This document shows positions 5,801 through 54,981 of a stretch of 64,000 nucleotides of DNA, in pieces. The notes beneath the pieces are model-generated. The model was not told where the DNA came from. It saw nothing but the letters and a program-made list of their open reading frames with translations, and did no database searches. This DNA comes from Macrostomum hystrix. Taxonomy: Eukaryota > Animalia > Platyhelminthes. A program made the translations under genes and the position numbers. The stretch's first letter is position 1. Every line of letters starts with the position of its first letter. The stretch covers positions 1,178,001 through 1,242,000 of the forward strand of contig CATNEN010000033.1 in assembly GCA_950097015.1 (NCBI GenBank), written 5' to 3'.

Positions 5801-6454
5801 TACGTTTATACGCGCGCATTTTATTTCACACTGTGCAAACTTTATAACTGCTTTTCTTTCTTATAACTAATTGGAATGTAGTTTCCGTTTAAATAGTACT
5901 CGTAGTTTGTTCAATATTATCGTTTGCAATCGACTACCTCTTGATTTTCACAATTCCTTCGCCAAAATATGTCTAACGGGCCCGCATTGGTACATACACG
6001 TTTTTTTAGCTCTAGTTCCATTGCTACGGGGATTAAATATTCGAAAATCTGTTGTGGATAGGCTTTTCTAATGCATTTCATGCGTACAGTGAGAGCTACC
6101 AATTGCCAACTAACTTAACTGATTGCGCTGATACGGCTCGTACGGCCAGTGGGTGGCGAAAGGCAGCTAGTCAAATATGCTAAAAATGTAAATCTTTCTT
6201 GTTTTCAATCAACTAACCCCCGAAAGGCTTAACAGATTTTTACAATTTCTTCGATAAAAGATTTCAAGTAATCCCGAATCGGTACATGTATTTTTATTAA
6301 GCTTAACTTCATTGCTAAAGGGATTAAATACTGAAAAAAAACTGAGAGAAGGCTTGTGGGCTTTTTGTGCAATTTACGCCCTTAGGGGCCGCTCCAAGTA
6401 ACTCCAAGGCACAGTGAAAGTGTACACTGCCTGACGATTAGAAAGTCAAGACAG

Positions 6455-7600
6455 ATGTACGCGACTGTGTGTGTGCGGGTGTACAGTATCTGTGTGCGTG
6501 TGTGCCGGTGTACAGTGTCTGTGTGAGTGTGTGCCGGTGTACAGTATCTGTGTGAGTGTGTGCCGGTGTACAGTATCTGTGTGAGTGTGTGCCGGTGTAC
6601 AGTATCTGTGTGAGTGTGTGCCGGTGTACAGTTTCTGTGTGAGTGTGTGCCGGTGTACAGTTTCTGTGTGCGTGTGTGCCGGTGTACAGTATCTGTGTGC
6701 GTGTGTGCCGGTGTACACGACTGTGTGAGTGTGTGCCGGTGTACAGTATCTGTGTGCGTGTGTGTTGCTGTACAGTATCTGTGTGAGTGTGTGCCGGTGT
6801 ACAGTATCTGTGTGAGTGTGTGCCGGTGTACACGACTGTGTGAGTGTGCGCCGGTGTACAGTATCTGTGTGAGTGTGTGCCGGTGTACAGTATCTGTGTG
6901 AGTGTGTGCCGGTGTACAGTGTCTGTGTGCGTGTGTGCCGGTGTACAGTATCTGTGTGCGTGTGTGCCGGTGTACAGTATCTGTGTGCGTGTGTGCCGGT
7001 GTACACGACTGTGTGAGTGTGTGCCGGTGTACAGTATCTGTGTGAGTGTGTGCCGGTGTACACGACTGTGTGAGTGTGTGCCGGTGTACAGTATCTGTGT
7101 GCGTGTGTGCCGGTGTACAGTATCTGTGTGCGTGTGTGCCGGTGTACAGTATCTGTGTGCGTGTGTGTTGCTGTACAGTATCTGTGTGAGTGTGTGCCGG
7201 AACAGTACATGTGTGCGTGTGTGCCGGTGTACAGTATCTGTGTGCGTGTGTGTTGCTGTACAGTATCTGTGTGAGTGTGTGCCGGTGTACAGTATCTGTG
7301 TGCGTGTGTGCCGGTGTACAGTATCTGTGTGCGTGTGTGCCGGTGTACACGACTGTGTGAGTGTGTGCCGGTGTACAGTATCTGTGTGAGTGTGCGCCGG
7401 TGTACAGTATCTGTGTGAGTGTGTGCCGGTGTACACGAGTGTGTGCCGGTGTACAGTATCTGTGTGCGTGTGTGCCGGTGTACACGACTGTGTGAGTGTG
7501 TGCCGGTGTACAGTATCTGTGTGAGTGTGCGCCGGTGTACAGTATCTGTGTGAGTGTGTGCCGGTGTACACGACTGTGTGAGTGTGTGCCGGTGTACAGC
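6455..7600. repeat. Minisatellite, 29-bp unit (ccggtgtacagtatctgtgtgagtgtgtg) with a shorter variant
   Basis: Periodicity visible directly; explains the long HT/CV-rich ORFs in several frames. Confidence 0.97.
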
Positions 7601-9199
7601 TTGCTGCGGGTCTTACGATCACAAAATGATGTGCCATACTACAAATAATTTTTTTATTTAGTACTACAGGTAGCCTATCACACTCTACAGGACTGTAAAA
7701 TGATTCACAATGTCCCGATTCCCGAATGCCGTTTTCGCTGGGTATAATTGCGCCCAGCGAAGCATGTAAGCCGTTTCACTCATCGAACCATGAAGTGGCG
7801 AGATGGATCTAAAGTCAGCGAACAGCCCAGCCGCACTTGTCTCGAGTGCCGCACAGGGATGGTGGGAAGTCAAATCTCTGACCACCATAGTTCTACATGC
7901 GCCCCAAGGAGGCTTCAGACTAAAATATTCCAGGACCTCACCGATTGACCACTTCTACTGCCATGCGTCTTCTGTCGCCCACTTTTTGCGAGCGCTTGAG
8001 CTTATAGCGTCATACTAGTAGTGAATAAATACTTGAGCAGATTTATAAACTCACCTGAGCAATCCTAGCAGAAAGCGAAATAATTTTCAGCTTTACTCAA
8101 ACAAACTGTCTCTACTCTCCGCCACGCCCGCCAGAGGAGCCTGAATCTAAATGTCACATGTGTGTGTGTGCATCCCATTTTCTTCCATCCCTTAAATGCA
8201 GTGACCAAGTCGATGCACTGCCATCATGTGCGCCTCAGCGCAATGCGCGGCCTGTACACATTTTCTAACAACCTCTCCAACGTGGGAGACGGAGGAGGTG
8301 GAGCGCCAACATTTTCCTTAACTCTCCGCTGGCCTTTCTTGTGCAATCGCCTGCAAGGCCTCTAGCCTCCCTAGGACTTGAGAGCAAAGCCCCGGGGCAG
8401 CTCTCGGCGCTGTACAATGCCGATCGTCGCCTTGCTTTTCCACGCACCCCCCCGATAGCCCCATCCTTCTCTTTCTCTCTCAGTCCTGCTCATCTCTCCC
8501 TTCTTTCCCTTTCACGAAAACTCTCGGTTTTGTTAATTTTGCCCAGGTCTGTCTGGCGGCCGCATGAGGCGGGTATTCTTGAGCAAGAAACACAACCCTG
8601 TAGACTTGGCTGACTAGCCGGGGACCAAGTCTAGCGACAGGAATTAGGTTTCGATAAACCAGTAACTTTACTAGTCTGAGTTACTTTTCAAAAAGCGACA
8701 TGCATTCGCTGCGTTACTTCAGAAATAATTACTAGTAGAGTGTTGTTAAAGTAGTGCATGTTTGTCATGCAATTTGCCATTTTTTAATGGTAGCTATTTA
8801 GTCATGCATAGCCTGCAAGCTCATGCAAGCTCATATTAGTCGTAAAAGCTCTCAACGACTTCCTGCCTTCCATCAAATATATTTTTTGCAAATTGCCTAC
8901 TACAGACCCGCGTTTTACTTTTTCTCTTGCTTCAAGCTAAATATTCCTGTTCCACTGAGGGGTGGTGACTTCCACCGCGTCACAATGCGACTAGATACAA
9001 AACACTACCCACAAGTCTACCAACCCTAACGTACATCTGTTTTAAATTCCCTCTCCCATTCTATCACCGGATCGCATGCACTGAGCTGGGTAATGCGGAA
9101 AAGAGGCATGGATGCGTCCAAATATTTGTGGTTTTCAATAGCTAGCATTATTAATTTTAATTTTAAGTACTTTCAAGTATTTATTAGCGTATTTTCTGA

Positions 9200-18071: not shown

Positions 18072-19663
<1,592 letters not shown>

Positions 19664-37494: not shown

Positions 37495-38105
37495 TAATCA
37501 GTCCCTAATGGCAGGTGTAATCAGTCCCTAATGGCAGGTGTAATCAGTTCCTAATAGCCGGTATTATCAGTCCCTAATGGCAGGTGTAATCAGTCCCTAA
37601 TGACCGGTATAATCAGTCCCTAATGGCAGGTGTAATCAGTCCCTAATGGCAGGTGTAATCAGTCCCTAATGGCAGGTGTAATCAGTCCCTAATGGCAGGT
37701 GTAATCAGTCCCTAATGGCAGGTGTAATCAGTCCCTAATGGCAGGTGTAATCAGTCCCTAATGGCAGGTGTAATCAGTCCCTAATGGCAGGTGTAATCAG
37801 TCCCTAATGGACGGTATAACCAATCCCTAATGGCAGGTGTAATCAGTCCCTAATGGCCGGTATAATCAATCCCTAATAACAGGTGTAATCAGTCCCTAAT
37901 GGCCGGTATAATCAATCCCTAATAACAGGTGTAATCAGTCCCTAATGGCCGGTATAATCAATCCCTAATAACAGGTGTAATCAGTCCCTAATGGCCGGTA
38001 TAATCAATCCCTAATAACAGGTGTAATCAGTCCCTAATAGCCGGTATAATCAATCCCTAATAACAGGTGTAATCAGTCCCTAATGGCAGGTGTAGTCAGT
38101 CCCTA
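37495..38105. repeat. Minisatellite, 23-bp unit (taatcagtccctaatggcaggtg), ending in two hairpins
   Basis: About 26 units; inverted repeats at 38090..38130 and 38135..38156. Confidence 0.95.
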
Positions 38106-38281
38106 ATAATATAATAGGGACTGACTACACATTCCCTCTCTAATATAATAGAGAGGCCAATCAGTGGATGTGCTGACACAGATGTAGGCTAGCTGCTTCA
38201 GCCAGTCCACCTCTCGCTAAACTTTCCAGGCTAGTTTAGCATGCGAAGAACTGTAAAAAATGTGAAATAAGTCTCTGCTCT

Positions 38282-41200
38282 ATGAACTGCTGGCTTAGCA
38301 TTATGTGCTTGCAAGTCAGCTGGTTGTCGCTGCTGCTGCTGCTGCTGCTGCTTTTGACGCTTGCAACAGCCAGGGGCCTGACAATCGACTCTTTGCCAAC
38401 GCCTGTGGAGCCTGCTTGCAAATTTCACACGGACAATGAAATTAATGCTTGTGAGTTCGGCTCTGAATGATCTATTGCTTCAAATAAAATACTATTTAGT
38501 GAAATTTACACTGAATATTTCCAGACATAACGCTTAAAGTTGCGCTATCTTCATACTAGTACCTCACCTTGTACCTTCTCCCTGTACCTCAAGTTCATTT
38601 CTTCCTGTCCATCAGGGCTATTCCCCCTATTCTTCAGGGCTATTCCTCCCTGTCCTTCAGGGCTATTCCTCCCTGTCCTTCAGGGCTATTCCTCCCTGTC
38701 CTTCAGGGCTATTCCTCCCTGTCCTTCAGGGCTATTCCTCCCTGTCCTTCAGGGCTATTCCTCCATGTCCATCAGGGCTATTCCTCCCTGTCCTTCAGGG
38801 CTATTCCTCCCTGTCCTTCAGGGCTATTCCTCCCTGTCCTTCAGGGCTATTCCTCCCTGTCCTTCAGGGCTATTTCTACCTGTCCTTCAGGGCTATTTCT
38901 ACCTGTCCTTCAGGGCTATTTCTACCTGTTCTTCAGGGCTATTTCTACCTGTCCTTCAGGGCTATTCCCCCTATTCTTCAGGGCTATTTCTACCTGTCCT
39001 TCAGGGCTATCCCCATCTGTCCTACAGGGCTATCCCCATCTGTCCTTCAGGGCTATCCCCATCTGTCCTACAGGGCTATCCCCATCTGTCCTACAGGGCT
39101 ATCCCCATCTGTCCTACAGGGCTATCCCCATCTGTCCTACAGGGCTATCCCCATCTGTCCTACAGGGCTATCCCCATCTGTCCTACAGGGCTATCCCCAT
39201 CTGTCCTACAGGGCTATCCCCATCTGTCCTACAGGGCTATCCCCATCTGTCCTACAGGGCTATCCCCATCTGTCCTACAGGGCTATCCCCATCTGTCCTA
39301 CAGGGCTATCCCCATCTGTCCTACAGGGCTATCCCCATCTGTCCTACAGGGCTATCCCCATCTGTCCTACAGGGCTATCCCCATCTGTCCTACAGGGCTA
39401 TCCATGTCTATCCCTTACCATCTCCTTTAGCTTCGAAGGGGTAAATAATTCAGTTACTTGATCGAAAATTTAGTGCGGTTTCAAACAAAACTCCACCCCC
39501 CTTAGACATATCGGCTCGCGCCCGCTTCTTCTTCAACTCCACCGAGGACGATTTTGACACGCCGATCACCATTGTGGCGCCCGGACCGTCGGTGGCGCAT
39601 CTATTCAGCGCCAAGGTGCTCGGCGTTATTCTTAAGAGAGATCTTTCGCTATGTCAATACCACGATTCTGCCCTTCAATTATCCCTGCGATTATCCCTAC
39701 GCTTGCGTGATCAAGCTTAACTCTGCGATGCCTAGCTACGATAATCACTACATTGATAGCGGCTTTCTCTATCGGAATTCCCAGCGGTAAGCTATGCGTC
39801 AGGTACACCCGCTTCTCCCTGTCCTTCACACCCGCTTCTCCCTGTCCTTCACACCCGCTTCTCCCTGTCCTTCACAGCCACTTCTCCCTGTCCTTCACAC
39901 CCACTTCTCCCTGTCCTTCACAGCCACTTCTCCCTGTCCTTCACAGCCACTTCTCCCTGTCCTTCACACCCGCTTCTCCCTGTCCTTCACACCCGCTTCT
40001 CCCTGTCCTTCACACCCGCTTCTCCCTGTCCTTCACACCCGCTTCTCCCTGTCCTTCACACCAACTTCTCCCTGTCCTTCACACCCGCTTCTCCCTGTCC
40101 TTCACACCCACTTCTCCCTGTCCTTCACACCCACTTCTCCCTGTCCTTCACACCCGCTTCTCCCTGTCCTTCACACCCGCTTCTCCCTGTCCTTCACACC
40201 CGCTTCTCCCTGTCCTTCACACCCACTTCTCCCTGTCCTTCACACCCGCTTCTCCCTGTCCTTCACAGCCACTTCTCCCTGTCCTTCACAGCCACTTCTC
40301 CCTGTCCTTCACACCCGCTTCTCCCTGTCCTTCACACCCGCTTCTCCCTGTCCTTCACACCCGCTTCTCCCTGTCCTTCACACCCGCTTCTCCCTGTCCT
40401 TCACACCAACTTCTCCCTGTCCTTCACACCCGCTTCTCCCTGTCCTTCACACCCACTTCTCCCTGTCCTTCACACCCACTTCTCCCTGTCCTTCACACCC
40501 GCTTCTCCCTGTCCTTCACACCCGCTTCTCCCTGTCCTTCACACCCGCTTCTCCCTGTCCTTCACACCCACTTCTCCCTGTCCTTCACACCCACTTCTCC
40601 CTGTCCTTCACACCCGCTTCTCCCTGTCCTTCACACCCGCTTCTCCCTGTCCTTCACAGCCACTTCTCCCTGTCCTTCACACCCGCTTCTCCCTGTCCTT
40701 CACAGCCACTTCTCCCTGTCCTTCACACCCACTTCTCCCTGTCCTTCACACCCGCTTCTCCCTGTCCTTCACACCCACTTCTCCCTGTCCTTCACACCCA
40801 CTTCTCCCTGTCCTTCACACCCGCTTCTCCCTGTCCTTCACAGCCACTTCTCCCTGTCCTTCACACCCGCTTCTCCCTGTCCTTCACAGCCACTTCTCCC
40901 TGTCCTTCACACCCGCTTCTCCTTGTCCTTCACACCCACTTCTCCCTGTCCTTCACACCCGCTTCTCCCTGTCCTTCACAGCCACTTCTCCTTGTCCTTC
41001 ACACCCGCTTCTCCCTGTCCTTCACACCCACTTCTCCTTGTCCTTCACACCCACTTCTCCTTGTCCTTCACACCCACTTCTCCCTGTCCTTCACAGCCAC
41101 TTCTCCCTGTCCTTCACACCCGCTTCTCCCTGTCCTTCACACCCGCTTCTCCCTGTCCTTCACACCCGCTTCTCCCTGTCCTTGTTCTCGTTGCAGGTAC

Positions 41201-44200
41201 ATCTACACCTCGGACAGTCATCGTGACTGTCCGTTGAACACCAGCTCCACAGACAGCCTGCTTGCCCGCGACGCAATCGCTGACAATGCCCCTCTGTGGC
41301 TAGATGAGACAATCTGCAGTAGAGGGCCGGCTCCGCCGCACCACCTGGCCGCAGCTGAGGCCGCCAGTGCCGGCGGCTACGTGCACTTTTCTGGAGCCGG
41401 CGGCCAGCAGAAGAAACTGCTGCTTACTAACCTGGCGGCCAGGGATGCCGAGCTGCGCGAATTTCTCGCCACATTTTTCATGCCGGATTTTAAAAGCCCA
41501 CCGGCTGAGGGCTACAATCCGTGCCTGTGAGTCCTACTGCTCAAATTATTACTAGTGCGGCCTTTTTGCCTATCTCACCGAACCCTTCACCCTCGCCTAT
41601 TTAGTTGGGCTCGCAGGGAACTGCTGCGCCAGAGAAACCTGTCAGCGGAGAGGGCCGCAGTCGACGGCCACTGGAGCCTGCCGCAGCTGAACCGGACCGC
41701 CTCGCTGCAGACAATGCGCCTGGCGCTGATGTGGCCCAACGGCAGCCGGCTGCACGACATTGACGTGCTTATCTGGGCCAGGCGAACTGTCGCCCAACTC
41801 AACGGCGATCCCATCGACCCGGCCGATGTCGAGCTGCCCGTCAGCCACAATGCGTCAGTCTTTTCGGCGCCTCCCATCACCATCGTGTCCACCCCCCAGG
41901 ACGACATGCTCGGCTACGCGTTTCTACTCCGGCGGGCCGGCCTTCGTCTGCACCTGGAGGCCCGCGGCATGGACTGCAACAAGGCTGACGTGCTGCAGTT
42001 CTTCGCCGATTCCGTCTGTCCGCGGGCGTGGCACGGCGGAGGCGGCGGCAGCGGCGGCGGACCGCCTGTCCGAGGCCCGCTGCTCGGCCTGTTGGCAGCC
42101 ACCTGCTCGGACACTGTCCGACCCATTGCCGAGCTGAGCACGGAGACCCGCAGCGTGGTGGTCTCGCCGACTGTTGAATCCACCGTCTACAATGACCCGA
42201 CGGCCTATCCGTACTTCTTTCGCACCATACCGAGCCTTGACGCCTACTCCGAGGCCGTCACGAGATTCCTGCGCAGGCACAATTGGCCAGACGTGGCCCT
42301 TTTATCCAGCGGCAAGCTCTTCCTGCGCCGCGAACAGTTCGAAGGCCGACCAGACGGCCTGACCGTCTGTTTCGAAGAGGTCGTCGACGAGGAGCTGCTC
42401 ACGCTGAAACAGGTGAGTTGCTAGTTTTATATGCTCGCCTTACTACTAAGCCTGCGTCTAAAACTAAGTAGTTAGTAAGCAATTAAATTTTAAATTAGAA
42501 ATAGAATTTACAATTTTACTAGAATGTAAAATAATAATTATCAGGCCGAGGAGAATCTGCGAAATGCCAAGCGCAAGCGCTGCCAGATGTTTGCCATGGA
42601 CTATATGCGCCGGGGCACCTGTTTGTACCTGTGCGCTGCGTACAAGGTCAAAATGACCCAGAGGAACAACTACATGTTTATTCTCAGCGACAGGTATTGC
42701 TTTTAGTTCAGGATGTCCAGCAATAGAGTTCAGGATTTCGAGCAATAGTATTCAGGATGTCCAGCAATAGTATTCAGGATGCCCAGCAATAGTATTCAGG
42801 ATGTCCAGCAATAGTATTCAGGATGCCCAGCAATAGTATTCAGGATGTCCAGCAATAGTATTCAGGATGTCCAGCAATAGTATTCAGGATGTCCAGCAAT
42901 AGTATTCAGGATGTCCAGCAATAGTATTCAGGATGCCCAGGAATCGGGTTCAGGATGTCCAGCAATAGTATTCAGGATGTCCAGGAATCGGGTTCAGGAT
43001 GTCCAGCAATAGTATTCAGGATGTCCAGCAATAGTATTCAGGATGTCCAGCAATAGTATTCAGGATGTCCAGCAATAGTATTCAGGATGCCCAGGAATCG
43101 GGTTCAGGATGTCCAGCAATAGTATTCAGGATGTCCAGGAATCGGGTTCAGGATGTCCAGCAATAGTATTCAGGATGTCCAGCAATAGTATTCAGGATGT
43201 CCAGCAATAGTATTCAGGATGTCCAGCAATAGTATTCAGGATGTCCAGGAATCGGGTTCAGGATGTCCAGCAATAGTATTCAGGATGTCCAGCAATAGTA
43301 TTCAGGATGTCCAGCAATAGTATTCAGGATGTCCAGGAATCGGGTTCAGGATGTTCCGCAATATCTCGCGCCCGCAGTGCCCGCAACGTATTCGTGACTT
43401 CTCAAGCGCTCTGCCACGGCACAGGCGCCATGCTCTCCAGCAATAACACGGAGGGCTGCACCGAGGAGAATCTAAGGGCTGTAGCCGATGGTCACCTGAT
43501 CGTGCGCCAGATACCCACCGAGTCTTACAAGGCCATCACATTCAACCGGAAGTCCAGCACTGACCGGCCTCCTCAAGTACCCATGGTGAATTTCTTCCAG
43601 TGGTACACTCAGCGTGCCATCCTGCTTCTGACCAGAGCCATCACCAACTTGGCTGAGCTGCAGCCATCCGCTGTGTACCATCTCAACAGTCCCAGCGTGG
43701 CGCCGCTGTTCAGAGAGTCCCTAGAGAACACCAAGCTGGGCAAAGATGAGACGCCACTATTGGACAAGAATCACGATGTTGGGCGTGGAAACTTGCGGGT
43801 GAGAGCTTCTGTTAATTCATTGTAGCAATACCAATGGGCTTGAAGATCGAGATCCGAGAAATTCTTTGCCCAGTCTGCAATCGTCGTTAAAGGTCCAGGA
43901 GTACTGAACTTCCTGAGTTCGAATCCGTGTCCAGGCCTCATTCATTTAAAGCTTGCTATGCAATTATGCCTTCGTACGCATCTGTTTGCGTTTGCATGCT
44001 TAGCGGTCAGCGGAATGGGCCGAACTAGCATCGACTCCCCGTTGAATTCCAGCTGGTCCTTCGTCGCTTCTTCCACTTCAAATCGAACACGAAGAGCTTC
44101 TTCACGGATCCGGCCAACAGGACGCTGTTTAGGAAGCTGCCCAATATGCTGACAACGGTGGACGGCGGCAAGCACATCTCCAACCAGCCGCTGGATGTCT

Positions 44201-47200
44201 ACCTATGGGAGCGAAATCGAAACGGCCTGCTGGAGGTCCATCTGTCTTCATTGCCAACTGCGGATCCCCGCTACGCCACAGAGAATGAGTTGTTCATTCA
44301 GCTTATGCGCGCTCCCTACGGCTGCAATCAGGGCCTCCTGGCTGCCCTGCGTACCGGCCTGCACTGCTCGGAGACCATCCTCGCTCTCGTTGGCTTCGTG
44401 TTCCTCCTCTGCCTGCTGGCCCTGGTGCTAATCTTCAGTCTACTGCTCAGGCATTATAAGCAGCGAGAGGGCCAACTCAGGACTGAGCCGTTTCAGCTGC
44501 TGCGCGATCAGCTGGCCCACTATGAGGTGGCCCGCTCACAGGTGGTGCTCAACAGGAAAATGGGCGCCGGATATTTTGGCACCGTGTACGGCGGCGAGGT
44601 CAACCTGGCCGGCCGGGGCAGCGGCGAGGCCTCCGCCTGGACCTCCTGCGTTATTAAGGTAGAGTGCGATTGCACTCCCGCTTCCACTGCTGGACATTCA
44701 TATCCCACATCCTCTATCCTCATTTCTAGGAATCCAGATCCTCATTTCTAGGAATCCAGATCCTCATTTCTTGGAATCCAGATCCTCATTTCTTGGAATC
44801 CATATCCTCATTTCTTGGAATCCAGATCCTCATTTCTAGGAATCCAGATCCTCATTTCTTGGAATCCATATCCTCATTTCTAGGAATGCATATCCTCATT
44901 TCTAGGAATCCATATCCTCATTTCTAGGAATCCAGATCCTCATTTCTAGGAATGCATATCCTCATTTCTTGGAATGCATATCCTCATTTCTAGGAATGCA
45001 TATCCTCATTTCTAGGAATGCATATCCTCATTTCTAGGAATGCATATCCTCATTTCTAGGAATGCATATCCTCATTTCTTGGAATCCATATCCTCATTTC
45101 TAGGAATGCATATCCTCATTTCTAGGAATGCATATCCTCATTTCTAGGAATCCATATCCTCATTTCTAGGAATGCGTATCCTCATTTCTAGGAATGCATA
45201 TCCTCATTTCTAGGAATGCATATCCTCATTTCTAGGAATCCATATCCTCATTTCTAGAAATGCATATCCTCATTTCTAGGAATCCAGATCCTCATTTCTT
45301 GGAATCCATATCCTCATTTCTAGGAATCCAGATCCTCATTTCTTGGAATCCATATCCTCATTTCTTGGAATGCATATCCTCATTTCTAGGAATGCATATC
45401 CTCATTTCTAGGAATCCATATCCTCATTTCTAGAAATGCATATCCTCATTTCTAGGAATCCAGATCCTCATTTCTTGGAATCCATATCCTCATTTCTAGG
45501 AATCCAGATCCTCATTTCTTGGAATCCATATCCTCATTTCTTGGAATGCATATCCTCTTTTCTAGAAATGCAGTACTTTTTTTCTTGGAATCCAGATGCC
45601 CACTCTAATAAACCGGAAATCCTTACTTCCAAGCATCCGAATTCTAGTAGTCTAGATCCTTTCTTCTAAGTTTTAGCCTTCAGGCTTGGCTGTCCTATTT
45701 TTCTGTAATAAACAGTTACCCAAGTGTTTAATTTCATGCAAAACGATTTCCACAAATAATTAAATTTACTATATTTGCAACCGGTCCGAATCGCAGCTGA
45801 CAAATGACGAAGGCAAGCACGAAGCGGTGGTGCAGCTGCTGAAGGAGGCGGTCTCCCTGACCAGCGTTCATCACGAGAACGTTATCAAGCTCCTCGGCGT
45901 GTGCACCGCGGATAGTCCGTACTATATCCTCATGGAGATGTGCCTGCACGGCGACCTCAAGGGCTTCCTGATGGCTCGCCGCACCCAGGCCCTGTCCGTG
46001 CCTGGTGCCCCGGAGACATCGCCGACGGCGCTGACTCGCTACGCGCTGGACATCGCCTCCGGTGTTGAATACCTGCACTCCAGGCACTTTGTGCACAGAG
46101 ATCTGGCTCTGCGCAACTGCCTCATCAATGAGCGCTTCCAGGTTGGCCTCTCAGTGCTGCCCTCCTTCATCCATGCCCTCTCCACAATTCAGCCACGTCC
46201 ACCGATCTGCCTACTTTACTCACCCTGCCGCCCATCCTTCACCCACCGATCCGCCCTCCTTCACCCACCGATCCGCCCTCCTTCACTCACCGATCCGCCC
46301 TCCTTCACCCACCAATCCGCCCTCCTTCACACACCGATCCGCCCTCCTTCATCCGCCGATCTGCCCTCCTTCACCCACCGATCCGCCCTTCTTCACCCAT
46401 CCGATCCGCCCTCCTTCACCCACCGATCCGCCCTCTTTTATCCGTCCGTAAACGCAGGTGAAAATCGGCGACTTCGGCCTGGCCCGCACCGTGAAGGACT
46501 ACTACCGAACTCAGTCACAGGAGATGGTGCCTGTCCGCTGGATGCCTCCGGAGGCCATTCAATACTACGTCTTCACTGTACACAGCGACGTCTGGTCCTA
46601 CGCCGTTGTCTTGTACGAGCTGGTCACCTTCGGCAAGTATCCGTTCGAGGAGCTCAGCCAGCAGCAGGTGATGGCACAGGTGAATCACGGCGTCACTCTG
46701 CTGTCCCGGTTCCCGGCTAGCGCCTCCCCGATTCTGCACACCATTGTGTCCCGCTGCTGGCAGTTTGAGCCAAAGCAGCGGCCGGACATGTCCGAGATAG
46801 CCGCCGTCCTGCGCGACAATCCCGACTGCGTCACGCCCTGTCTGGACGAGGCGCCGCCGATGCAGCCGCCAGAGGAGCTGGATCGGGCCGGCGGAGTCGG
46901 CGACCCGCTCAGGGCGGTCGGTCGGCAACCCAGCGGCGGCGGAGGCGCCGGCGGTGGCGGCCGCGACGGTTGGTCAAGCTTGTCCGGCAGCTCGCGCCAG
47001 TTGAATCCCTTGAATGTAAATTCGTCGTTTTCGAATTCGACAATGGCGGTGGTGGCGGCGGCGGCTGCAGCCGCTTCGATGGTGCACTCCGGGCAGGCTG
47101 GGGGCGGCGGCAGGCGTAGCGTTGGTAGCGGCGGCGGGCCGAAACCGCGCTGTGGTACTGCGCGCAACGCTGTCGCAGCAGAAGCGGCGCTGCAGGTCAG

Positions 47201-47357
47201 GCAGCCGTCGTGGCTCCCGGTTGAAGCCGGATCCGCACAGCACCGGCTCGGCGCCTCCCGGAGTGTGCGCGAGCGGCGACTCGGTCTTCCTGACCGACTC
47301 TCAGGCTGCGCTGACTCACAATGTGCTGGAGTGGACTGGCTAGTAAGGAAGGAATAG
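38282..47357 (+). CDS. VKR: Venus kinase receptor: signal peptide, N-terminal domain, Venus-flytrap module, TM helix, insulin-receptor-like tyrosine kinase; ~1335 aa after correcting one frameshift
   Basis: join(38282..38450,39506..39786,41197..41526,41605..42412,42545..42693,43378..43798,44053..44658,45797..46141,46458..47357); phases fit apart from one extra base near 39634-39642. Signal peptide SLLLLLLLLLTLATARG; VFT motifs AATCSDTVRPIAE...AYPYFFRTIPS...HNWPDVALL and LCAAYKVKM; TM ILALVGFVFLLCLLALVLIFSLLL; kinase GAGYFGTVYGG, VIK, HRDLALRNCLI, KIGDFGLAR, DYYR, PVRWMPPE, SDVWSY. Confidence 0.88.
38612..39402. repeat. 23-bp minisatellite filling VKR intron 1
   Basis: cagggctattcctccctgtcctt, grading into cagggctatccccatctgtccta. 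Confidence 0.96.
39805..41182. repeat. 23-bp minisatellite filling VKR intron 2
   Basis: cacacccgcttctccctgtcctt, ~60 copies; source of the 494- and 578-aa pseudo-ORFs. Confidence 0.97.
42705..43352. repeat. 22-bp minisatellite filling VKR intron 5
   Basis: caggatgtccagcaatagtatt, with a gaatcgggtt variant. Confidence 0.96.
44700..45575. repeat. 22-bp minisatellite in VKR intron 7
   Basis: atatcctcatttctaggaatgc repeated. Confidence 0.96.
46215..46440. repeat. Diverged ~22-bp repeat in VKR intron 8
   Basis: ccgatccgccctccttcaccca-type units. Confidence 0.85.
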
Positions 47358-47488: not shown

Positions 47489-47625
47489 TCAGCCTCCCAG
47501 ATCCTCAAAGTGATCTGTCAGCCTCCCAGATCCTCAAAGTGATCTGTCAGCCTCCCAGATCCTCAAAGTGATCTGTCAGCCTCCCAGATCCTCAAAGTGA
47601 TCTGTCAGCCTCCCAGATCCTCAAG
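47489..47625. repeat. 29-bp tandem repeat downstream of VKR stop
   Basis: gatcctcaaagtgatctgtcagcctccca, ~4 copies. Confidence 0.9.
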
Positions 47626-48224: not shown

Positions 48225-48875
48225 CCTACCACCCCACTTTGTGCACTCTAACGCAAACCAGTCCGCCCCATCACCCCACTATGTACACTCTAGCGCTAGC
48301 CAGTCCGCCCCACCACCCCACTATGTGCACTCTAGCGCTAGCCAGTCCGCCCCACCACCCCACTATGTGCACTCTAGCCAGTCAGCCCCACCACCCCACT
48401 ATGTGCACTCTAGCCAGTCAGCCCCACCACCCCACTATGTACACTCTAGCCAGTCAGCCCCACCACCCCACTATGTGCACTCTAGCGCTAGCCAGTCCGC
48501 CCCACCACCCCACTATGTACACTCTAGCCAGTCAGTCCCACCACCCCACTATGTGCACTCTAGCCAGTCAGCCCCACCACCCACCCCACTATGTACACTC
48601 TAGCCAGTCAGCCCCACCACCCCACTATGTACACTCTAGCCAGTCAGCCCCACCACCCCACTATGTACACTCTAGCCAGTCAGCCCCACCACCCCACTAT
48701 GTGCACTCTAGCGCTAGCCAGTCCGCCCCACCACCCCACTATGTACACTCTAGCCAGTCAGTCCCACCACCCCACTATGTGCACTTTAGCCAGTCAGCCC
48801 CACCACCCCACTATGTGCACTCTAGCCAGTCAGCCCCACCACCCCACTATGTACTCGTACACTCTAGCCAGTCCC
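48225..48875. repeat. Minisatellite, 36/42-bp units
   Basis: ccaccccactatgtgcactctagccagtcagcccca, with a +6-bp variant. Confidence 0.95.
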
Positions 48876-49745: not shown

Positions 49746-52700
49746 ATGCACCACAGCAGCGCTGTCCGCAGAGGCCCTATGGCTGTGGCCAGGACAGTTG
49801 TGATCAGCCGCACCCTGGCAGCCGCCGTCAGGTCGCCGACCGTCACATCCTCCTCGGCGGCGGACTTTGTTAACTTTGCGGCCGCAGTGGGAGGAGGCGA
49901 GCTGAGCAGTGTGCTCAACAGCAGGCAGCGGGAGAAGCAGGACATGCGCGAGTTAAACCAGCGCTTTGCCAGCTACATTGACACGGTGGGGGCTGCTCAA
50001 ATCTCCAATTGTTTGACAGCACGAACTTGGTTTGATGTTTGAAGCTCTCCCTGCATGTTTTATTGCCCGACCGCACCGATAGCCGCCATGAAATTGTAGC
50101 CGGGATAATTGTCCATCCCTCCCAGCGTTAGCCCATCAGGCTGAAACTGGACAATTAACTGCTGATAATTGCGGAGCAGACAGATAAGTAGAAGGGCCTC
50201 ATATAATGCGAGTCACAGACCAGCTCGGTATGGGATTCTGTGGGCTTCCAGTTTACTCAGAGGGGGTTTAAACCAGACAGGCAAACAGCCAGGCAACAAT
50301 GGACGGGCATGCAGGCGCTCCACCGTCCCCTGACGGCAGTCTCAGCAACGGCGGCCTGCGCTCCCCCGCCCTGCAGGTCCGCTTCCTGGAGGCGCAGACC
50401 CGGAAGCTGTCCGAGGAGCTTCGCAAACTGCGCGAGTCCTGGGGCAAGGAGACGGAGAAGGTCAAGCAGCTGTACGGGGAGGAGCTGCAGCAAATGCGCC
50501 GCCTGCTGGAGGAGGCCGACCAGTGCAAGGCCGGGTCCGAGGTTCGAATCAACTCGCTTGGCGACCAGCTCAACGAGCTCCAGCATCTGTGAGTTGGGGA
50601 GACTAGGGCGCTCAGGGATAGATGCCATGAGAAAGGGGATAGAGATGCCATGAGAAAGGGGATAGAGATGCCATGAGAAAGGGGATAGAGATGCCATGAG
50701 AAAGGGGATAGAGATGCCATGAGAAAGTGGTTAGAGATGCCATCAGAAAGGGGATAGAGATGCCATGAGAAAGGGGTTAGAGATGCCATGAGAAAAGGGT
50801 TAGAGATGCCATGAGAAAGGGGATAGAGATGCCATCAGAAAGGGGATAGAGATGCCATGAGAAAGGGGATAGAGATGCCATGAGAAAGGGGTTAGAGATG
50901 CCATGAGAAAGTGGTTAGAGATGCCATCAGAAAGGGGATAGAGATGCCATGAGAAAGTGGTTAGAGATGCCATCAGAAAGGGGATAGAGATGCCATGAGA
51001 AAGTGGTTAGAGATGCCATCAGAAAGGGGATAGAGATGCCATGAGAAAGGGGTTAGAGATGCCATCAGAAAGGGGATAGAGATGCCATGAGAAAGGGGAT
51101 AGAGATGCCATGAGAAAGGGGATAGAGATGCCATGAGAAAGGGGTTAGAGATGCCATCAGAAAGGGGATAGAGATGCCATGAGAAAGGGGATAGAGATGC
51201 CATGAGAAAGGGGATAGAGATGCCATGAGAAAGGGGTTAGAGATGCCATGAGAAAGGAATTAGAGATGCCATGAGAAAGGAATTAGAGATGCCATGAGAA
51301 AGGAATTAGAGATGCCATGAGAAAGGGGATAGAGATGCCATGAGAAAAGGGTTAGAGATGCCATGAGAAAGGGGATAGAGATGCCATGAGAAAGGGGTTA
51401 GAGATGCCATGAGAAAGGAATTAGAGATGCCATGAGAAAGACCTCCCAGGCGCCCCCTTCAGGCTAGACGAGGCGAATCGTCAGCGCGCCGCTGACTGCG
51501 AAGCCGCCGACCGGCTGGTCCAGCAGGTCTCGAGCTCCGAGGCCGAGATGTCGCTACTTCGCCGCCGATTGGCCGCCTGCAACGAGGAGCGAACTCGCGA
51601 CCTGACTGAGGTTAAACGACTGCGCCAGGAAGTGGCTCGGCTCAGACAGGTCAGGGCAGAATCTGCTCCCTGTCTCTCAGATGAAAAAAGCAGATACTAA
51701 ATTGTGCCCCAGCATCTTTGGCTCGTTTCTGCTCTCGCATATTTTTCTTGTCTACGAGAAGTTGGCACCCCCTGCCGTGAGTTTGGTGCTGTTGGCCCTT
51801 CAGACTACAGGCCCCGCCTCTCATTCCCACTCTCTTTGCTCTGCATCCACAACTAATGGCTTCTAGCAGCAGATTCTCAGACCCACCTAGTCCAGCAATT
51901 CTTAGAAAATATTGTATAGAAGAGCTCTCATTTTATGTCTAAAATTTTTTCCTGCACGTAATTAACTGCTTTAGCTACTTAAACTATTTTGGAAAATTAG
52001 AAAAGGTTGTGAATTCGAATCCTTTCCACCGTGCTCAGGACTTGGACTCGCAGACGCTGGCCCACATCAACGCTGATAACAGTGCTCAATCCCTGCGAGA
52101 GGAGTTGGAGTTTCAGCGCTCACTGCACGACTCGGTCAGTCCGGAAACTTCCACATTAAATTCTTTTTCTCTTGGAAATTTCGCTCTGTACTACTTGCTT
52201 ATTGCTAGTAGTGTAGTTTGCTGCTTTCCCAGTTTATTGAGTGAGACCCGTCTCAATCAGGAGCTGAAGGAGCTGGCCGCCCTTGCCTACCGTGACACCA
52301 CCGGGGAAAACCGGCAGTACTGGAAGGCCGAGATGGCGCAGGTACTCAGCGACATCCGCCGCGAGTACGATGTCAAGCTTGAGTCGGCCCGCTCCGAGGT
52401 GGAGTCTCAGTACAGCCTGCGGGTACAGGAGGCCCGCGCCGGCCGTAGCCGGGACACGGCCGAGCTGACGCGGCTTCGCGAGGAGGGTAAGCGGCTGAAG
52501 GCCCAGCAGGCCGAGCTGCGCAACCGCCTGCCGGAGGTCGAGGCCCGCTGCGCCCAGCTCGAGCGAGAGCTGGACGAGATTCGCCGCGAGGCCGAGGACG
52601 CTGAGCGCCAGTTTGAGTCGGAGCGCGGCCGCCTGCGCGCCCAACTCGCCGGCGCCAACGCCACCCTGGAGGAGCACCTGGTCGAGGTCAAGACACTCAC

Positions 52701-54981
52701 CGACACCAAGCTCAGCCTGGAGCTGGAGATCCACGCCTACAGGAAGCTGCTGGAGGGCGACGAGATTCGGTGAGTGGCCAGCTGATCACACCATCCACCC
52801 CTGACCCACACCATCCACCCCTGACCCACACCATCCACCCCTGACCCACACCATCCACCCCTGACTTACACCATCCACCCTTGACCCACATCATCCAATC
52901 CGGGATCAGCAAATTTGTCGAATGTCACCCGCATTCCTGGTCATCCCATCGATCCCGACTCTTAGATATCCCATTGAACGGAGAACAGAGAGCAGAGAAC
53001 GGACACTGCTCACTGCGAGTCACTATCAAGGTAACTTTAGTCCTCCTTCGGTCTACCGAAATCGGTCCGGTTTTGAGTCCAGACTAAGAGTTAAATCCAA
53101 TAATATCAAAGTTTATATTTATTCAAATTTAACTTTAAGCATAACAAATTAAATATTTGAGTTTCGTGAGGCAATTAACACGTGTGGCGACTGAGAACTT
53201 TAGTCTCTAACACCTCCGATTTGTCCAAAAACCGCAGACTAAACCCTGAACAGAAGGCCCAAGCCGAAACGCTTATACATGACGTCATGAGTGCCATGCT
53301 ACCGGAGCCGCCACCACCGCTGCAGCCTGAGCCGGAAGCTGAAAAACCTTTGAAGTCACCGCCGCCGCCGGAAAAGCCTTTGAAGTCACCGCCGCCGCCG
53401 GAAAAGCCTTTGAAGTCACCGCCTCCGCCGGAAAAACCTTTAAAATCGACACCGCCACCGCCACCTCCGCCACCGCCGCCACTTTCCGACGGTGATGCGC
53501 CCTCTGCAGGTTCGCAGCAGCAGCAGCAGCAGCAGTATCGCTTTCACAACCAAAATCGCTTTTCAATGTCGTTCTTCGCCTGCTTCTCTACATTCTTTAG
53601 GTGCTTTCAATGCCTGACTTTCTGCATATCTTACTACCGCTTGTTTCGTCAGTAGTATTGTATGACCCAAATGCTGTTTTTTCTAACTGTATAAAACTGC
53701 ACCTCTAAATGCTTTCCTTATTTTTATTGCTTATTTGGCATAAGACTTATTTTTCAAAAATTCTAAAACTGGTTTCCTTGGCTTGCTGGATTGCGATCTT
53801 TTAGCCCAGTGGTTAGAGCCTCACACTTCTGACCGAGAGGTCGCGAGTTCGAATATTCTCCACTTGGAGAATTGTGTTTGACTCTTCTCTCAGTCGATCT
53901 CAACCGAACAGCCACCCACCCGGCCTTGCAGTGAACCTCATCAAGGGTGAGATGTCAGCCAGGACCACTTACCAGCGCACCGCCAAGGGCAACACCGGCA
54001 TCCTGGAGTGCTGCTCCGATGGAAAGTTTGTCAGCATTGAGTACACTGGAAAGAAGGTATGCTGCTGATCGCATTGCTGAATTTCAGCACCCAATTCCTC
54101 CGCTATGCAACACTCAGCTACGCAATTTTAACAGAAGGAGGACCTGAGCGACTGGACTCTGGTGCGTAACATTGACAACAATCGCCAGGTGGTGAAGTTT
54201 ACCTTTCCCAAAGGCACCGTGCTGGATAGCAGCTGCAACACTGTGAAGGTAGGTTTCATAGGCAAGCTTCTTCATTCCCCATCACCCCCGCTCCGCTCAT
54301 CAGCTCCGACTTCATTCCTCATCAGCTCCGCCTTCATTACTCATCAGCTCCGCCTTCATTCCCCATCCGCTTCGCCTTCATTCCCATCAACTCCGCCTTC
54401 ATTCCCCATCCGCTCCGCCTTCATTCCCCATCAACTCCGCCTTCGTTCTTCTCGCCCGCCCGCAGATCTGGGCTGCAGGTCAGAAGCCGCCATCGGCTGC
54501 AGATGCAAAGGAAAACGGCGGCAGCGGCAGCGTGAAGGAGCTAGAAGCCGCCGAGCAGTCCTGGGGCATCGGTGGCAGCATTCTGACCACCCTGGCCAAC
54601 CCGGACGGAGAGGTAATCCGTGGGCTGTGCTGACGCATGACGCAACCGCAGCTGTCAGGTGGGGAAGAGGCAATCAAAAGCAGCACAGGCTTTATCTATA
54701 GCCGAGACCCTTGGGAAGAATTTCACGCTTAGCAGCAAAGATTGATCAGTTAAATCTTGCTGCATCTATGGTGGAAATCAGAACTGGGTGTTAGTCCCCC
54801 TGACTAAGCCAAGAAAATGTTTGTGAGGCTGAATCTTCTGTTAAACCCATTGGGAGCTGGCATAAGGATAAGCGTAGCGTGAAATGTACAGGAAGCTTTA
54901 AAAATAAAGGCAACTTTTTCCTAATCTGTTTGGCAGGAGCGAGCAACGCACACCCAGAAGACCACTTATTCGGCTAACTGA
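49746..54981 (+). CDS. Protostome-type cytoplasmic intermediate filament protein with lamin-tail domain (570 aa; 669 aa with the candidate cassette exon)
   Basis: join(49746..49985,50377..50588,51463..51649,52039..52134,52261..52769,[53238..53534],53894..54056,54135..54248,54466..54612,54937..54981). Rod start EKQDMRELNQRFASYIDT|VRFLEAQTRKL, rod end KLSLELEIHAYRKLLEGDEIR, tail KGEMSARTTYQRTAKG...DGKFVSIE...WGIG...ERATHTQKT. No CaaX, so not a lamin. Confidence 0.92.
50617..51440. repeat. 23-bp minisatellite filling intermediate-filament intron 2
   Basis: gagaaaggggatagagatgccat repeated. Confidence 0.96.
52788..52890. repeat. 20-bp tandem repeat just after the intermediate-filament exon 5 donor
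   Basis: acaccatccacccctgaccc, ~5 copies. Confidence 0.9.
53802..53878 (+). mobile_element. tRNA-derived SINE head fragment
   Basis: A-box TAGCCCAGTGGTTAG and B-box GAGTTCGAAT, but the anticodon and acceptor stems do not pair; the 3' flank ctccacttggagaattgtgt resembles the SINE at ~55164. Confidence 0.55.
54270..54445. repeat. Diverged short tandem repeat in intermediate-filament intron
   Basis: tcagctccgccttcattcccca-type units. Confidence 0.75.

What the first reader, a model, noticed from the sequence alone, without database searches (positions are those of the whole stretch)
38282..47357. Venus kinase receptor: a flytrap-domain receptor tyrosine kinase
Seen: one gene joins a GABA-B/class C GPCR-like Venus-flytrap module (TCS...FFRTIPS...W) through a single TM helix to an insulin-receptor-like kinase with a DYYR activation loop; the ORF track splits it into seven or more pieces. 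Knowledge: this architecture defines VKRs, described in schistosomes, insects and some other invertebrates, absent from vertebrates and linked to reproduction; the VFT serine that binds amino-acid carboxylates follows the conserved Cys, and CS is present here. Inference: if the host is a free-living flatworm, this copy bears on VKR origin, ligand and gonadal role outside parasites.
Basis: partly seen in the sequence, partly recalled or inferred. Interest (0 to 1): 0.75.

Follow-up and report, generated by a model that had tools for sequence, protein, structure and literature searches.

The report
Flatworm Venus kinase receptor gene
This is a real nine-exon gene for a Venus kinase receptor (a flytrap-type ligand sensor joined through one membrane helix to an insulin-receptor-like tyrosine kinase) in a free-living Macrostomum flatworm; it is one of five such genes there, belongs to an already known receptor family, and has a one-base break in the reading frame of its second exon as assembled.

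Summary
On the + strand from 38282 to 47357, nine GT-AG exons encode a signal peptide, a pre-flytrap region, an ANF_receptor Venus flytrap, one TM helix and a complete tyrosine kinase.

- **One gene:** the exons lie in order on full-length Macrostomum lignano flytrap+kinase proteins. One exon (44053-44658) alone spans the ectodomain stalk, the TM helix and the kinase N-lobe. Four other loci in the same genome have the same layout.
- **Family:** each kinase exon, placed separately in a tree, falls in the clade of all flytrap+kinase proteins (94/99), sister to the insulin receptors. An AU test rejects grouping it with them (p ~2e-130). The genome's own two insulin-receptor genes are elsewhere.
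- **Ligand-site residues:** C35, S66, E92, R107-T-I and W128 are present. Y406 is Gln here and Ser/Thr in all Macrostomum relatives.
- **Host:** a Macrostomum species other than M. lignano.
an exon at 39506-39786 whose two conserved halves are in different frames (one extra base within 39595-39622). This may be an assembly error, a real defect, or be bypassed by an acceptor at 39609, which gives an open 1301-codon frame.

A 2014 review already noted VKR genes in free-living planarians, so this is a new member of a known kind. An earlier scan note covers another VKR copy in this genome.

The parts
38282..38450 (+). Exon 1: start codon and signal peptide (hydrophobic core 38300-38377); donor CTT|GTGAGT, leaves phase 1
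   Evidence: Kyte-Doolittle 19-residue maximum 2.57. It is the first in-frame ATG after a stop.
39506..39786 (+). The upstream half (39508-39594) is in one frame and the downstream half (39623-39784) in another, with one extra base somewhere in 39595-39622. An alternative acceptor at 39608|39609 keeps the frame open.
   Evidence: Both halves are conserved with paralogue A, whose exon (C39:154786-154522) is 265 nt in a single frame, and with M. lignano P0200/P0201 residues 56-85 and 91-142. Read as assembled from the 39506 acceptor, the frame stops at codon 128. Read from 39609, the whole gene is open for 1301 codons.
41197..41526 (+). Exon 3: pre-flytrap region (conserved GGYVHFSG..QQKKLLLT..L.EFL block)
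   Evidence: Acceptor TTCTCGTTGCAG|G, donor CT|GTGAGT. It aligns with P0200/P0201 residues 144-233 directly after the exon 2 match, and also with M. lignano groups b and c.
41605..42412 (+). Exon 4: end of the pre-flytrap region and first part of the Venus flytrap. Contains C35 (41969-41983 block), Cys-Ser66 (42098-42112), E92 (42164-42181), R107-T-I (42206-42235) and W128 (42275-42292). An alternative in-frame acceptor lies at 41616|41617.
   Evidence: Pfam ANF_receptor 4e-10; residue table; 78-nt intron before it and donor CAG|GTGAGT after it.
42545..42693 (+).
   Evidence: 59% identical to P0009 residues 456-504; splice signals; motif table.
43378..43798 (+). Exon 6: second half of the flytrap. 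The Y406 position is Gln (in QWYTQRAI, 43598-43621).
   Evidence: Aligns with P0009 residues 504-651; splice signals; column 781.
44053..44658 (+). Exon 7, the bridging exon: conserved ectodomain stalk (W, two Cys), TM helix 44374-44448, juxtamembrane region, G-loop GAGYFGTV (44563-44586) and the catalytic Lys as its last codon (44656-44658). An alternative acceptor lies at 44028|44029.
   Evidence: One open frame of 202 codons. Kyte-Doolittle maximum 3.33 at the TM helix, the only such segment apart from the signal peptide. Conserved columns 953, 1001 and 1018. Aligns with P0009 residues 659-817.
45797..46141 (+). Exon 8: kinase helix-C Glu (45836-45853 block), hinge, and catalytic loop HRDLALRNCL (46094-46123)
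   Evidence: Pfam PK_Tyr_Ser-Thr 6.5e-27. The best solved match is S. mansoni VKR2 kinase 7zvs at 89.9 bits, against 75.9 for the next. Both flanking introns are phase 0.
46458..47357 (+). Exon 9: DFG (46470-46478), activation loop DYYR (46497-46508), MPPE (46542-46553), the rest of the C-lobe, a 164-residue Gly/Ala/Ser-rich tail with no Tyr, and stop TAG 47355-47357
   Evidence: Pfam 2.7e-35; 88.5% identical to M. lignano P0003; motif coordinates and tail composition.
38605..46435 (.). Intronic minisatellites with 22-23-nt units: 38605-39403, 39805-41183, 42707-43363, 44715-45569 and 46199-46435. They fill five of the eight introns and produce the long spurious ORFs in the ORF list.
   Evidence: Tandem Repeats Finder; repeat-derived ORFs.

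Best explanation
[quoted passage not shown] Shown here: nine GT-AG exons encode, in order, a signal peptide, a pre-flytrap region of about 200 residues, a two-lobed ANF_receptor-type Venus flytrap, one transmembrane helix and a tyrosine kinase that keeps every catalytic motif. Inferred from studied VKRs (PMC3703292, PMC5026347): a small ligand, most likely an alpha-amino acid held by the conserved Ser66 and Arg107, closes the flytrap. The receptor dimer then autophosphorylates on the paired activation-loop tyrosines (DYYR) and signals through ERK, PI3K/Akt/S6K and possibly JNK. By analogy it would act in growth or gamete production. The Macrostomum-wide replacement of pocket residue Y406 (Gln here) and the weakened lobe-2 motif suggest that ligand preference differs from the L-arginine-activated bee and schistosome receptors. 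As assembled, exon 2 carries one extra base. I think an assembly indel is the most likely cause, in which case the product is about 1335 residues.
For: - **Domains:** Pfam on single exons.
- **Exon order:** exons lie in order on full-length M. lignano proteins P0009 and P0200/P0201.
- **Splicing:** all junctions are canonical and in phase from exon 2's donor to the stop.
- **Bridging exon:** 44053-44658 holds the stalk, the TM helix and the kinase N-lobe in one open frame.
- **Genome context:** five loci have flytrap then kinase on the same strand.
- **Exhaustive search with the C-lobe exon:** 26 of 48 single-kinase hits carry a flytrap, 20 are fragments with fewer than 300 residues ahead of the kinase, and 2 are Trk.
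- **Tree:** the flytrap+kinase clade has support 94/99, the window's exons sit in a Macrostomum clade at 100/100, and the IR clade (95/96) includes this genome's own IR exons. The AU test against IR gives p 2e-130.
- **Solved structures:** exon 8 matches SmVKR2 kinase best.
- **Flytrap specificity:** the flytrap exon finds the five VKR loci plus one marginal 25-bit hit (C30:4100121, E 9.7e-4) among more than 100 ANF_receptor matches in the genome.
- **Published residues:** checked.
Against:
- Exon 2 is out of frame as assembled, and the straight reading stops at codon 128.
- Y406 and most of the GY(V/I)WFLPxWL motif are not conserved.
- The VKR clade's bootstrap is 94, just under the 95 star level.
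- No named, experimentally studied VKR sequence was in the tree. VKR identity of the reference rows rests on their ANF_receptor+PK_Tyr architecture and their species (for example Drosophila grimshawi and D. willistoni, both listed with a VKR in PMC3703292).
- Ligand and pathway are inferred by analogy only.
Confidence: 0.88

Rival explanations
1. It is a VKR-family gene, but this copy is a young pseudogene or a null allele. The extra base in exon 2 is real, translation from the signal-peptide exon stops at codon 128, and no receptor is made.
For: The frame break is in the assembled sequence. It is not in a long homopolymer. Four paralogues could cover a loss. Other notes on this genome report some real frameshifts (untested here).
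Against: There is only one disruption in about 3.9 kb of coding sequence. All eight introns keep GT-AG and phase, and every catalytic and most ligand-site residues are intact. The last exon is 88.5% identical to the M. lignano orthologue fragment, within the range of the other orthologue pairs. Other notes report that several apparent frameshifts in this assembly were assembly errors once reads were laid (untested here).
Confidence: 0.22
2. The gene is intact because it uses a different acceptor in exon 2 (39608|39609). This skips the first 34 codons of the ancestral exon and gives a 1301-residue receptor.
For: The acceptor TCTATTCAG|CG is in the right phase. It is the only alternative acceptor in the island that gives a stop-free frame, and the whole nine-exon model is then open.
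Against: The skipped part is conserved with paralogue A and with M. lignano P0200/P0201 (50% over 30 residues). Those proteins read through both halves, so the ancestral exon includes it. The upstream acceptor at 39504-39505 has the better pyrimidine tract.
Confidence: 0.1
3. The flytrap exons and the TM/kinase exons are two adjacent genes, a secreted flytrap protein and a truncated kinase, not one receptor.
For: There is no RNA evidence here. Some M. lignano database models contain only the kinase part (P0003, P0010, P0022).
Against: Exon 44053-44658 begins with ectodomain columns conserved in flytrap+kinase proteins and runs through the TM helix into the kinase. The junction from 43798 to 44053 is phase 0 to phase 0 with good signals. 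There is no start codon with a signal peptide ahead of the kinase part. Five loci and many full-length relatives keep the same order. The kinase-only models are N-terminal truncations, and one is fused to a reverse transcriptase.
Confidence: 0.03
4. It is a receptor of another named class: an insulin-receptor paralogue that captured a flytrap, a receptor guanylate cyclase (the automatic name of several relatives), or a class C GPCR.
For: IR is the sister clade. IGF1R and Trk score about as high as SmVKR2 on the C-lobe exon alone. UniProt and NCBI name several relatives 'guanylate cyclase'.
Against: The AU test rejects a clade with IR. The genome's real IR genes, with Recep_L domains, are at C33:237-252 kb and C9:369-385 kb. 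No guanylate cyclase or 7TM domain is found in any exon, and there is only one TM helix. The relatives named 'guanylate cyclase' have ANF_receptor plus PK_Tyr and no cyclase domain.
Confidence: 0.02

Closest known systems
Schistosoma mansoni VKR1 and VKR2 (platyhelminth Venus kinase receptors)
   Same: Same architecture: flytrap, one TM helix, IR-like tyrosine kinase. Exon 8 matches the solved SmVKR2 kinase (7zvs) better than any other structure. It shares the flatworm-style SPTVES form of the E92 motif with the trematode proteins and has the YY activation loop and all catalytic motifs. Its MPPE variant is reported for cestode and Drosophila VKRs (PMC3703292).
   Different: The host is free-living. 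There are five paralogues here against the two reported for each of S. mansoni and Clonorchis sinensis and one in cestodes (PMC3703292). Y406 is replaced by Gln. The lobe-2 motif reads NNYMFILSD. There is no juxtamembrane pYxxL Shb-docking motif like SmVKR1 Y979ENL; the window has YEVA. The C-terminal tail has no tyrosine.
Insect VKRs (e.g. Apis mellifera, Aedes aegypti, Drosophila species other than D. melanogaster)
   Same: Same clade in the kinase tree. They share C35, Cys-Ser66, E92, R107-T-I and W128 and are 44-50% identical in the C-lobe.
   Different: Insect proteins have 400-500 residues ahead of the flytrap, including a recognisable OpuAC-like domain. The window has about 200 residues there with no significant match. 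Insects keep Y406 and GYVWFLPxWL.
Insulin / IGF1 receptor family
   Same: Sister kinase clade (97/92 for IR+VKR). Both have a paired-tyrosine activation loop, and the C-lobe is about 40% identical to this genome's own IR exons.
   Different: The ectodomain is entirely different: no L-domain, furin-like or fibronectin exons. The genome's IR genes are separate loci. A clade with IR is rejected.
Class C GPCR flytraps (GABA-B R2, taste T1R, mGluR)
   Same: Best solved-structure matches to the flytrap exon, including the YPYFFRT(V/I)PS block shared with GABA-B R2.
   Different: The match is weak (26.7 bits) compared with 74-125 bits to VKR flytraps. There is one TM helix instead of seven, and the output is a kinase, not G-protein coupling.

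Membership tests
Venus kinase receptor (VKR) | Extracellular Venus flytrap (ANF_receptor-type) module | tested here: met
   Pfam ANF_receptor E 4e-10, above the gathering score, on exon 41555-42421. Exons 4-7 align along the flytraps of 28 flytrap+kinase proteins.
Venus kinase receptor (VKR) | A single transmembrane helix between flytrap and kinase | tested here: met
   One 25-residue hydrophobic segment at 44374-44448 (Kyte-Doolittle 3.33). No other exon exceeds 1.5 except the signal peptide. This rests on hydropathy only.
Venus kinase receptor (VKR) | Intracellular tyrosine kinase that groups with VKRs, apart from IR, ROR and other RTKs | tested here: met
   Tree with the exons as separate rows: flytrap+kinase clade 94/99, and the window in a Macrostomum subclade at 100/100. 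The AU test rejects a clade with IR. EGFR was not in the tree. The reference VKRs were identified by architecture and species, not by published accession numbers.
Venus kinase receptor (VKR) | All three parts in one polypeptide | tested here: met
   Genomic evidence only: exons in order on full-length relatives, the bridging exon, in-phase GT-AG junctions, and five loci with the same layout. No transcript was examined.
Venus kinase receptor (VKR) | Kinase motifs GxGxxGxV, VAxK...E, HRD(L/V/I)xxRNxL, DFG, YY, M(A/S/P)PE (PMC3703292) | tested here: met
   GAGYFGTV; CVIK (Lys kept, Val-Ala replaced by Cys-Val); Glu in LLKEAV; HRDLALRNCL; DFG; DYYR; MPPE.
Venus kinase receptor (VKR) | Flytrap residues C35, S66, R107(-T108-I109) and W128 (PMC3703292) | tested here: met
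   GMDCNKA, ATCSDTV, YPYFFRTIPS and RHNWPD sit in the columns that are conserved in 22-28 of the 28 reference proteins.
Venus kinase receptor (VKR) | Y406 in the ligand pocket (reported in all VKRs except lepidopteran ones) | tested here: not met
   The column is Tyr in 24 of 28 references, Gln in the window, and Ser or Thr in all four M. lignano groups. The paper itself lists exceptions, so I read this as a clade-specific change in the pocket, not as exclusion from the family.
Venus kinase receptor (VKR) | Motif GY(V/I)WFLPxWL ('present in most VKRs') | tested here: not met
   The window has NNYMFILSD: Tyr and Leu are kept, Trp is replaced by Phe, and the final WL is absent. All Macrostomum relatives have NY.FIL.
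Venus kinase receptor (VKR) | Kinase activated by extracellular amino acids or small ligands | not testable with these tools
   Needs expression and ligand assays.
Venus kinase receptor (VKR) | Uninterrupted reading frame (functional copy) | tested here: inconclusive
   The frame is open for 1301 codons with the acceptor at 39609 but stops at codon 128 with the conserved acceptor at 39506. No reads were available to check the extra base.
Insulin receptor family | L-domain / furin-like / fibronectin ectodomain, and kinase within the IR clade | tested here: not met
   No such Pfam match in any exon. The Recep_L loci linked to IR-type kinases lie elsewhere. A clade with IR is rejected.
Receptor guanylate cyclase (automatic name of several relatives) | C-terminal guanylate cyclase catalytic domain after a kinase-homology domain | tested here: not met
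   The last exon has only PK_Tyr followed by a low-complexity tail and a stop. The relatives named 'guanylate cyclase' have no cyclase domain either.
Class C GPCR | Seven-transmembrane domain after the flytrap | tested here: not met
   There is one TM helix, followed by a kinase.

The most novel reading that the evidence does not exclude
Macrostomum carries an old five-gene VKR family; parasitic flatworms are reported to have one or two. Four of the five copies pair with M. lignano groups in the tree, and the fifth (the window) pairs by 88.5% identity to a fragment that was not in the tree. All copies have replaced the pocket residue Y406 and loosened the lobe-2 motif. The novel reading is that a free-living flatworm diversified VKRs into sensors for several different small ligands. 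A second part of that reading is that the family's ectodomain was ancestrally a double sensor (an OpuAC-like betaine/choline-binder domain plus the flytrap), of which the Macrostomum copies keep only a remnant.
Probability: 0.3. Interest if true: 0.55.

Novelty: new member of a known kind. Interest (0 to 1): 0.35.

Why it matters
VKRs control gamete production and growth in schistosomes, mosquitoes and locusts. They are pursued as drug targets because vertebrates lack them, but parasites are hard to work with genetically. Macrostomum is transparent and hermaphroditic, and published work reports RNAi and transgenesis for it, so a catalogued VKR set there would allow ligand, tissue and fertility questions to be tested in a free-living flatworm. 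The searchable literature has no functional study of a VKR in any free-living flatworm, and none that names the Macrostomum genes. Databases mislabel several of them as guanylate cyclases. The gain is incremental: the family, its architecture and its presence in free-living planarians are already known, and this copy may be defective.

Tried and rejected
- **Joined product:** I sent no spliced protein to any search, family or fold tool. All searches were exon by exon and by reference. The joined coding sequence was assembled only inside a script, to count frames and stops, and was not printed.
- **M. lignano orthologue:** it could not be recovered. P0003 is only a C-terminal fragment fused to a reverse transcriptase, has no contig on record, and has no full-length cluster mate. 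A search with the flytrap exon found only a 46%-identical fragment.
- **Direct exon 1 to exon 3 splicing:** rejected, because it is out of frame and stops at codon 70.
- **A 28-nt GT..AG 'intron' (39588-39615):** it would restore the exon 2 frame, but I considered it implausibly short and set it aside.
- **Pre-flytrap exons:** Pfam found nothing, and hhalign against the OpuAC-like profile was not significant (probabilities 0.1-5%).
- **Juxtamembrane Tyr as a Shb docking site:** rejected. YEVA does not fit pYxxL and the column is not conserved.
- **Sixth kinase locus (C41:1954338-1954868):** no flytrap match nearby, so it was not counted as a VKR.
- **Structure prediction:** not run, because the flytrap is split over four exons and could not be submitted as one protein.
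Full report
**What is there.** On the + strand between 38282 and 47357, the ORF list and a scan for stop-free stretches show coding-like pieces separated by long open frames that are only translated tandem repeats. Pfam was run on each piece by reference. It finds ANF_receptor in 41555-42421 (E 4e-10) and PK_Tyr_Ser-Thr split between 45827-46717 (profile positions 47-143) and 46458-47354 (positions 141-257).

**Gene model.** Splice signals were read from the sequence and checked in a script for frame and stops only. The exons are:
- 38282-38450 (signal peptide)
- 39506-39786
- 41197-41526
- 41605-42412
- 42545-42693
- 43378-43798
- 44053-44658
- 45797-46141
- 46458-47357

All junctions are GT-AG. 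From the donor of exon 2 onward all phases agree. Two kinase introns are phase 0: one follows the catalytic Lys codon and one precedes VKIGDFG. In-frame alternative acceptors exist at 41617 and 44029. Five of the eight introns are filled by separate arrays of 22-23-nt repeats. I did not send a joined product to any search, family or fold tool. Every search was done exon by exon and by reference, and the joined coding sequence existed only inside the frame-check script.

**One gene or two.**
- The exons lie in order on one full-length protein, M. lignano P0009: 257-456, 456-504, 504-651, 659-817, 816-932, 929-1073. The 5' exons lie in order on P0200/P0201 residues 56-348.
- Exon 44053-44658 is a single open frame. 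It begins with ectodomain columns conserved in 25-28 of 28 flytrap+kinase proteins, passes through the only TM helix (44374-44448) and ends with the G-loop and the catalytic Lys.
- In the window's own genome (220 Mb, 42 contigs; window = C33:1178001-1242000), four other loci have a flytrap exon followed by VKR-like kinase exons on the same strand: C39:141.6-154.8 kb, C41:2.096-2.103 Mb, C39:1.640-1.650 Mb and C30:1.824-1.831 Mb.

**Family.**
- *Exhaustive search.* An exhaustive HMMER search with the C-lobe exon returned 48 single-kinase hits among the best 150. Of these, 26 carry a flytrap, 20 are fragments with fewer than 300 residues ahead of the kinase, and 2 are Trk-type receptors.
- *Names of the relatives.* The nearest relatives are M. 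lignano proteins with ANF_receptor plus PK_Tyr, several auto-named 'Guanylate cyclase'. Further relatives with the same architecture come from trematodes and many insects, including Drosophila species that PMC3703292 lists as having a VKR.
- *Solved structures.* Exon 8 matches the S. mansoni VKR2 kinase best (89.9 bits against 75.9). On the C-lobe exon, Trk, IGF1R and VKR2 score alike.
- *Tree.* I built a maximum-likelihood tree (LG+C20, 69 rows) in which each window kinase exon, and each paralogue or IR exon from the same genome, was its own fragment row. All flytrap+kinase proteins form one clade (94/99), sister to the insulin receptors (97/92). The three window exons each fall in a Macrostomum-only subclade (100/100). 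This genome's two Recep_L-linked kinase loci group with vertebrate IRs (95/96).
- *AU test.* An AU test rejects a clade of the window exons with IR (delta lnL 102.9, p 2e-130). The caveat is that I chose the grouping after seeing the tree.
- *Flytrap specificity.* The flytrap exon finds only the five VKR loci plus one marginal 25-bit hit, although the genome has more than 100 ANF_receptor matches. Its best solved match, GABA-B R2, scores only 26.7 bits.

**Published VKR residues (PMC3703292).** Present are C35, Cys-Ser66, E92 (as SPTVES, shared with trematodes), R107-T108-I109, W128 and all kinase motifs including YY and MPPE. Not conserved are Y406, which is Gln here and Ser or Thr in all M. 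lignano groups, and most of GY(V/I)WFLPxWL, which reads NNYMFILSD. The tail after the kinase has no tyrosine, and the juxtamembrane YEVA does not fit the Shb-docking pYxxL of SmVKR1.

**The frame break.** Exon 2 was found because paralogue A conserves two stretches in the unique island between the first two repeat arrays. In paralogue A the exon is 265 nt in one frame, entering in phase 1 and leaving in phase 2. In the window it is 281 nt, its upstream half is in one frame and its downstream half in another, and 28 nt separate the two conserved halves where a multiple of three is expected. Read as assembled, translation stops at codon 128. An acceptor at 39608|39609 gives an open 1301-codon frame but drops a conserved segment. 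M. lignano P0200/P0201 read through both halves. I rank the explanations as follows:
- assembly indel, about 0.55
- real frameshift, about 0.22
- alternative acceptor, about 0.1

Other notes of this scan say that several apparent frameshifts in this assembly proved to be assembly errors and some proved real. I could not test that here.

**Host and orthology.** Kinase exons of the four paralogues are 84-99% identical to M. lignano groups c, e/f, b and a, and the window's last exon is 88.5% identical to P0003. The host is therefore a Macrostomum species other than M. lignano. Four of the five copies pair with M. lignano groups in the tree, and the window pairs with P0003 by identity alone, because that fragment was not in the tree. 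On that evidence the five copies predate the split between the two species.

**Pre-flytrap region.** I tested the claim at family level. A profile of the pre-flytrap regions of 19 flytrap+kinase proteins matches solved glycine-betaine-binding proteins (4xz6 at E 4.2e-9, 3l6g at 1.6e-7, 2b4l at 2.6e-6), and 7 of the 19 members match Pfam OpuAC. For the window's own exons the comparison is not significant. No paper in the library mentions VKR together with betaine.

**Novelty.** The family, its architecture and its wide invertebrate range are known. A 2014 review states that the planarians Schmidtea and Dugesia have VKR genes. No paper in the library reports the Macrostomum genes or any functional work in a free-living flatworm. 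This is a new member of a known kind. The modest additions are the five-copy family, the pocket change and the possible defect in this copy.

Noticed in passing
window 37500-38107, 38605-39403, 39805-41183, 42707-43363, 44715-45569, 46199-46435, 47489-47624, 48228-48854: The gene's larger introns and both flanks are filled by separate minisatellites, nearly all with a 22-23-nt period and different unit sequences. Two of the units share CTGTCCTTC. They create long spurious ORFs of up to 578 codons.
   Followed up: partly
G000:C39:141.6-154.8 kb (-), C41:2.096-2.103 Mb (-), C39:1.640-1.650 Mb (+), C30:1.824-1.831 Mb (-): Four more flytrap+kinase (VKR-like) loci in the same genome, each pairing with a different M. 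lignano group (c, e/f, b, a). Parasitic flatworms are reported to have one or two VKRs. The C30 copy shows stops inside one exon match, which may be an intron.
   Followed up: partly
alignment A1 (pre-flytrap regions of P0168, P0114, P0175 and 16 others): Many flytrap+kinase proteins carry an OpuAC-like (glycine-betaine-binding-protein-like) domain ahead of the flytrap. The profile matches PDB 4xz6 at E 4.2e-9, and 7 of 19 members match Pfam OpuAC. No searchable paper mentions this for VKRs.
   Followed up: partly
G000:C33:237756-252172 (-) and G000:C9:369130-384742 (-): Two insulin-receptor-type genes: Recep_L_domain exons at 71 and 84 bits, and kinase exons that match IGF1R/IR at 140 and 164 bits. 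One is on the same contig as the window, about 1 Mb away.
   Followed up: partly
proteins P0011, P0153, P0157, P0165, P0166 (M. lignano); P0169-P0171 (Drosophila, Phlebotomus); P0177: Database names are misleading. Proteins with ANF_receptor plus a tyrosine kinase and no cyclase domain are called 'Guanylate cyclase', 'retinal guanylyl cyclase 2-like', 'receptor-type guanylate cyclase' or 'Insulin-like growth factor 1 receptor'.
   Followed up: yes
protein P0003 (M. lignano, UniProt A0A1I8FCE3): The only database fragment of the window gene's orthologue starts at the last kinase exon and is fused to a reverse-transcriptase domain (RVT_1), so it is a chimeric gene model.
   Followed up: partly
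window 18087-18836 (+), 52009-52770 (+), 6438-7634 (-): Neighbouring coding pieces: a Ras-family GTPase N-terminus (E 6.6e-12), an intermediate-filament rod exon (E 1.9e-26), and a weak, sub-threshold L28e-like match.
   Followed up: no
G000:C1:24.55-24.88 Mb and 26.3-27.4 Mb; C9:1.026-1.093 Mb: There are dozens of Recep_L_domain open frames of about 580-1120 codons in clusters. The C9 cluster also has kinase matches. This suggests large tandem families of L-domain proteins or receptors.
   Followed up: no
G000:C41:1954338-1954868 (-): A kinase locus 42-49% identical to the window's kinase exons, between the VKR tier and the rest, with no flytrap match nearby. Its class was not determined.
   Followed up: no
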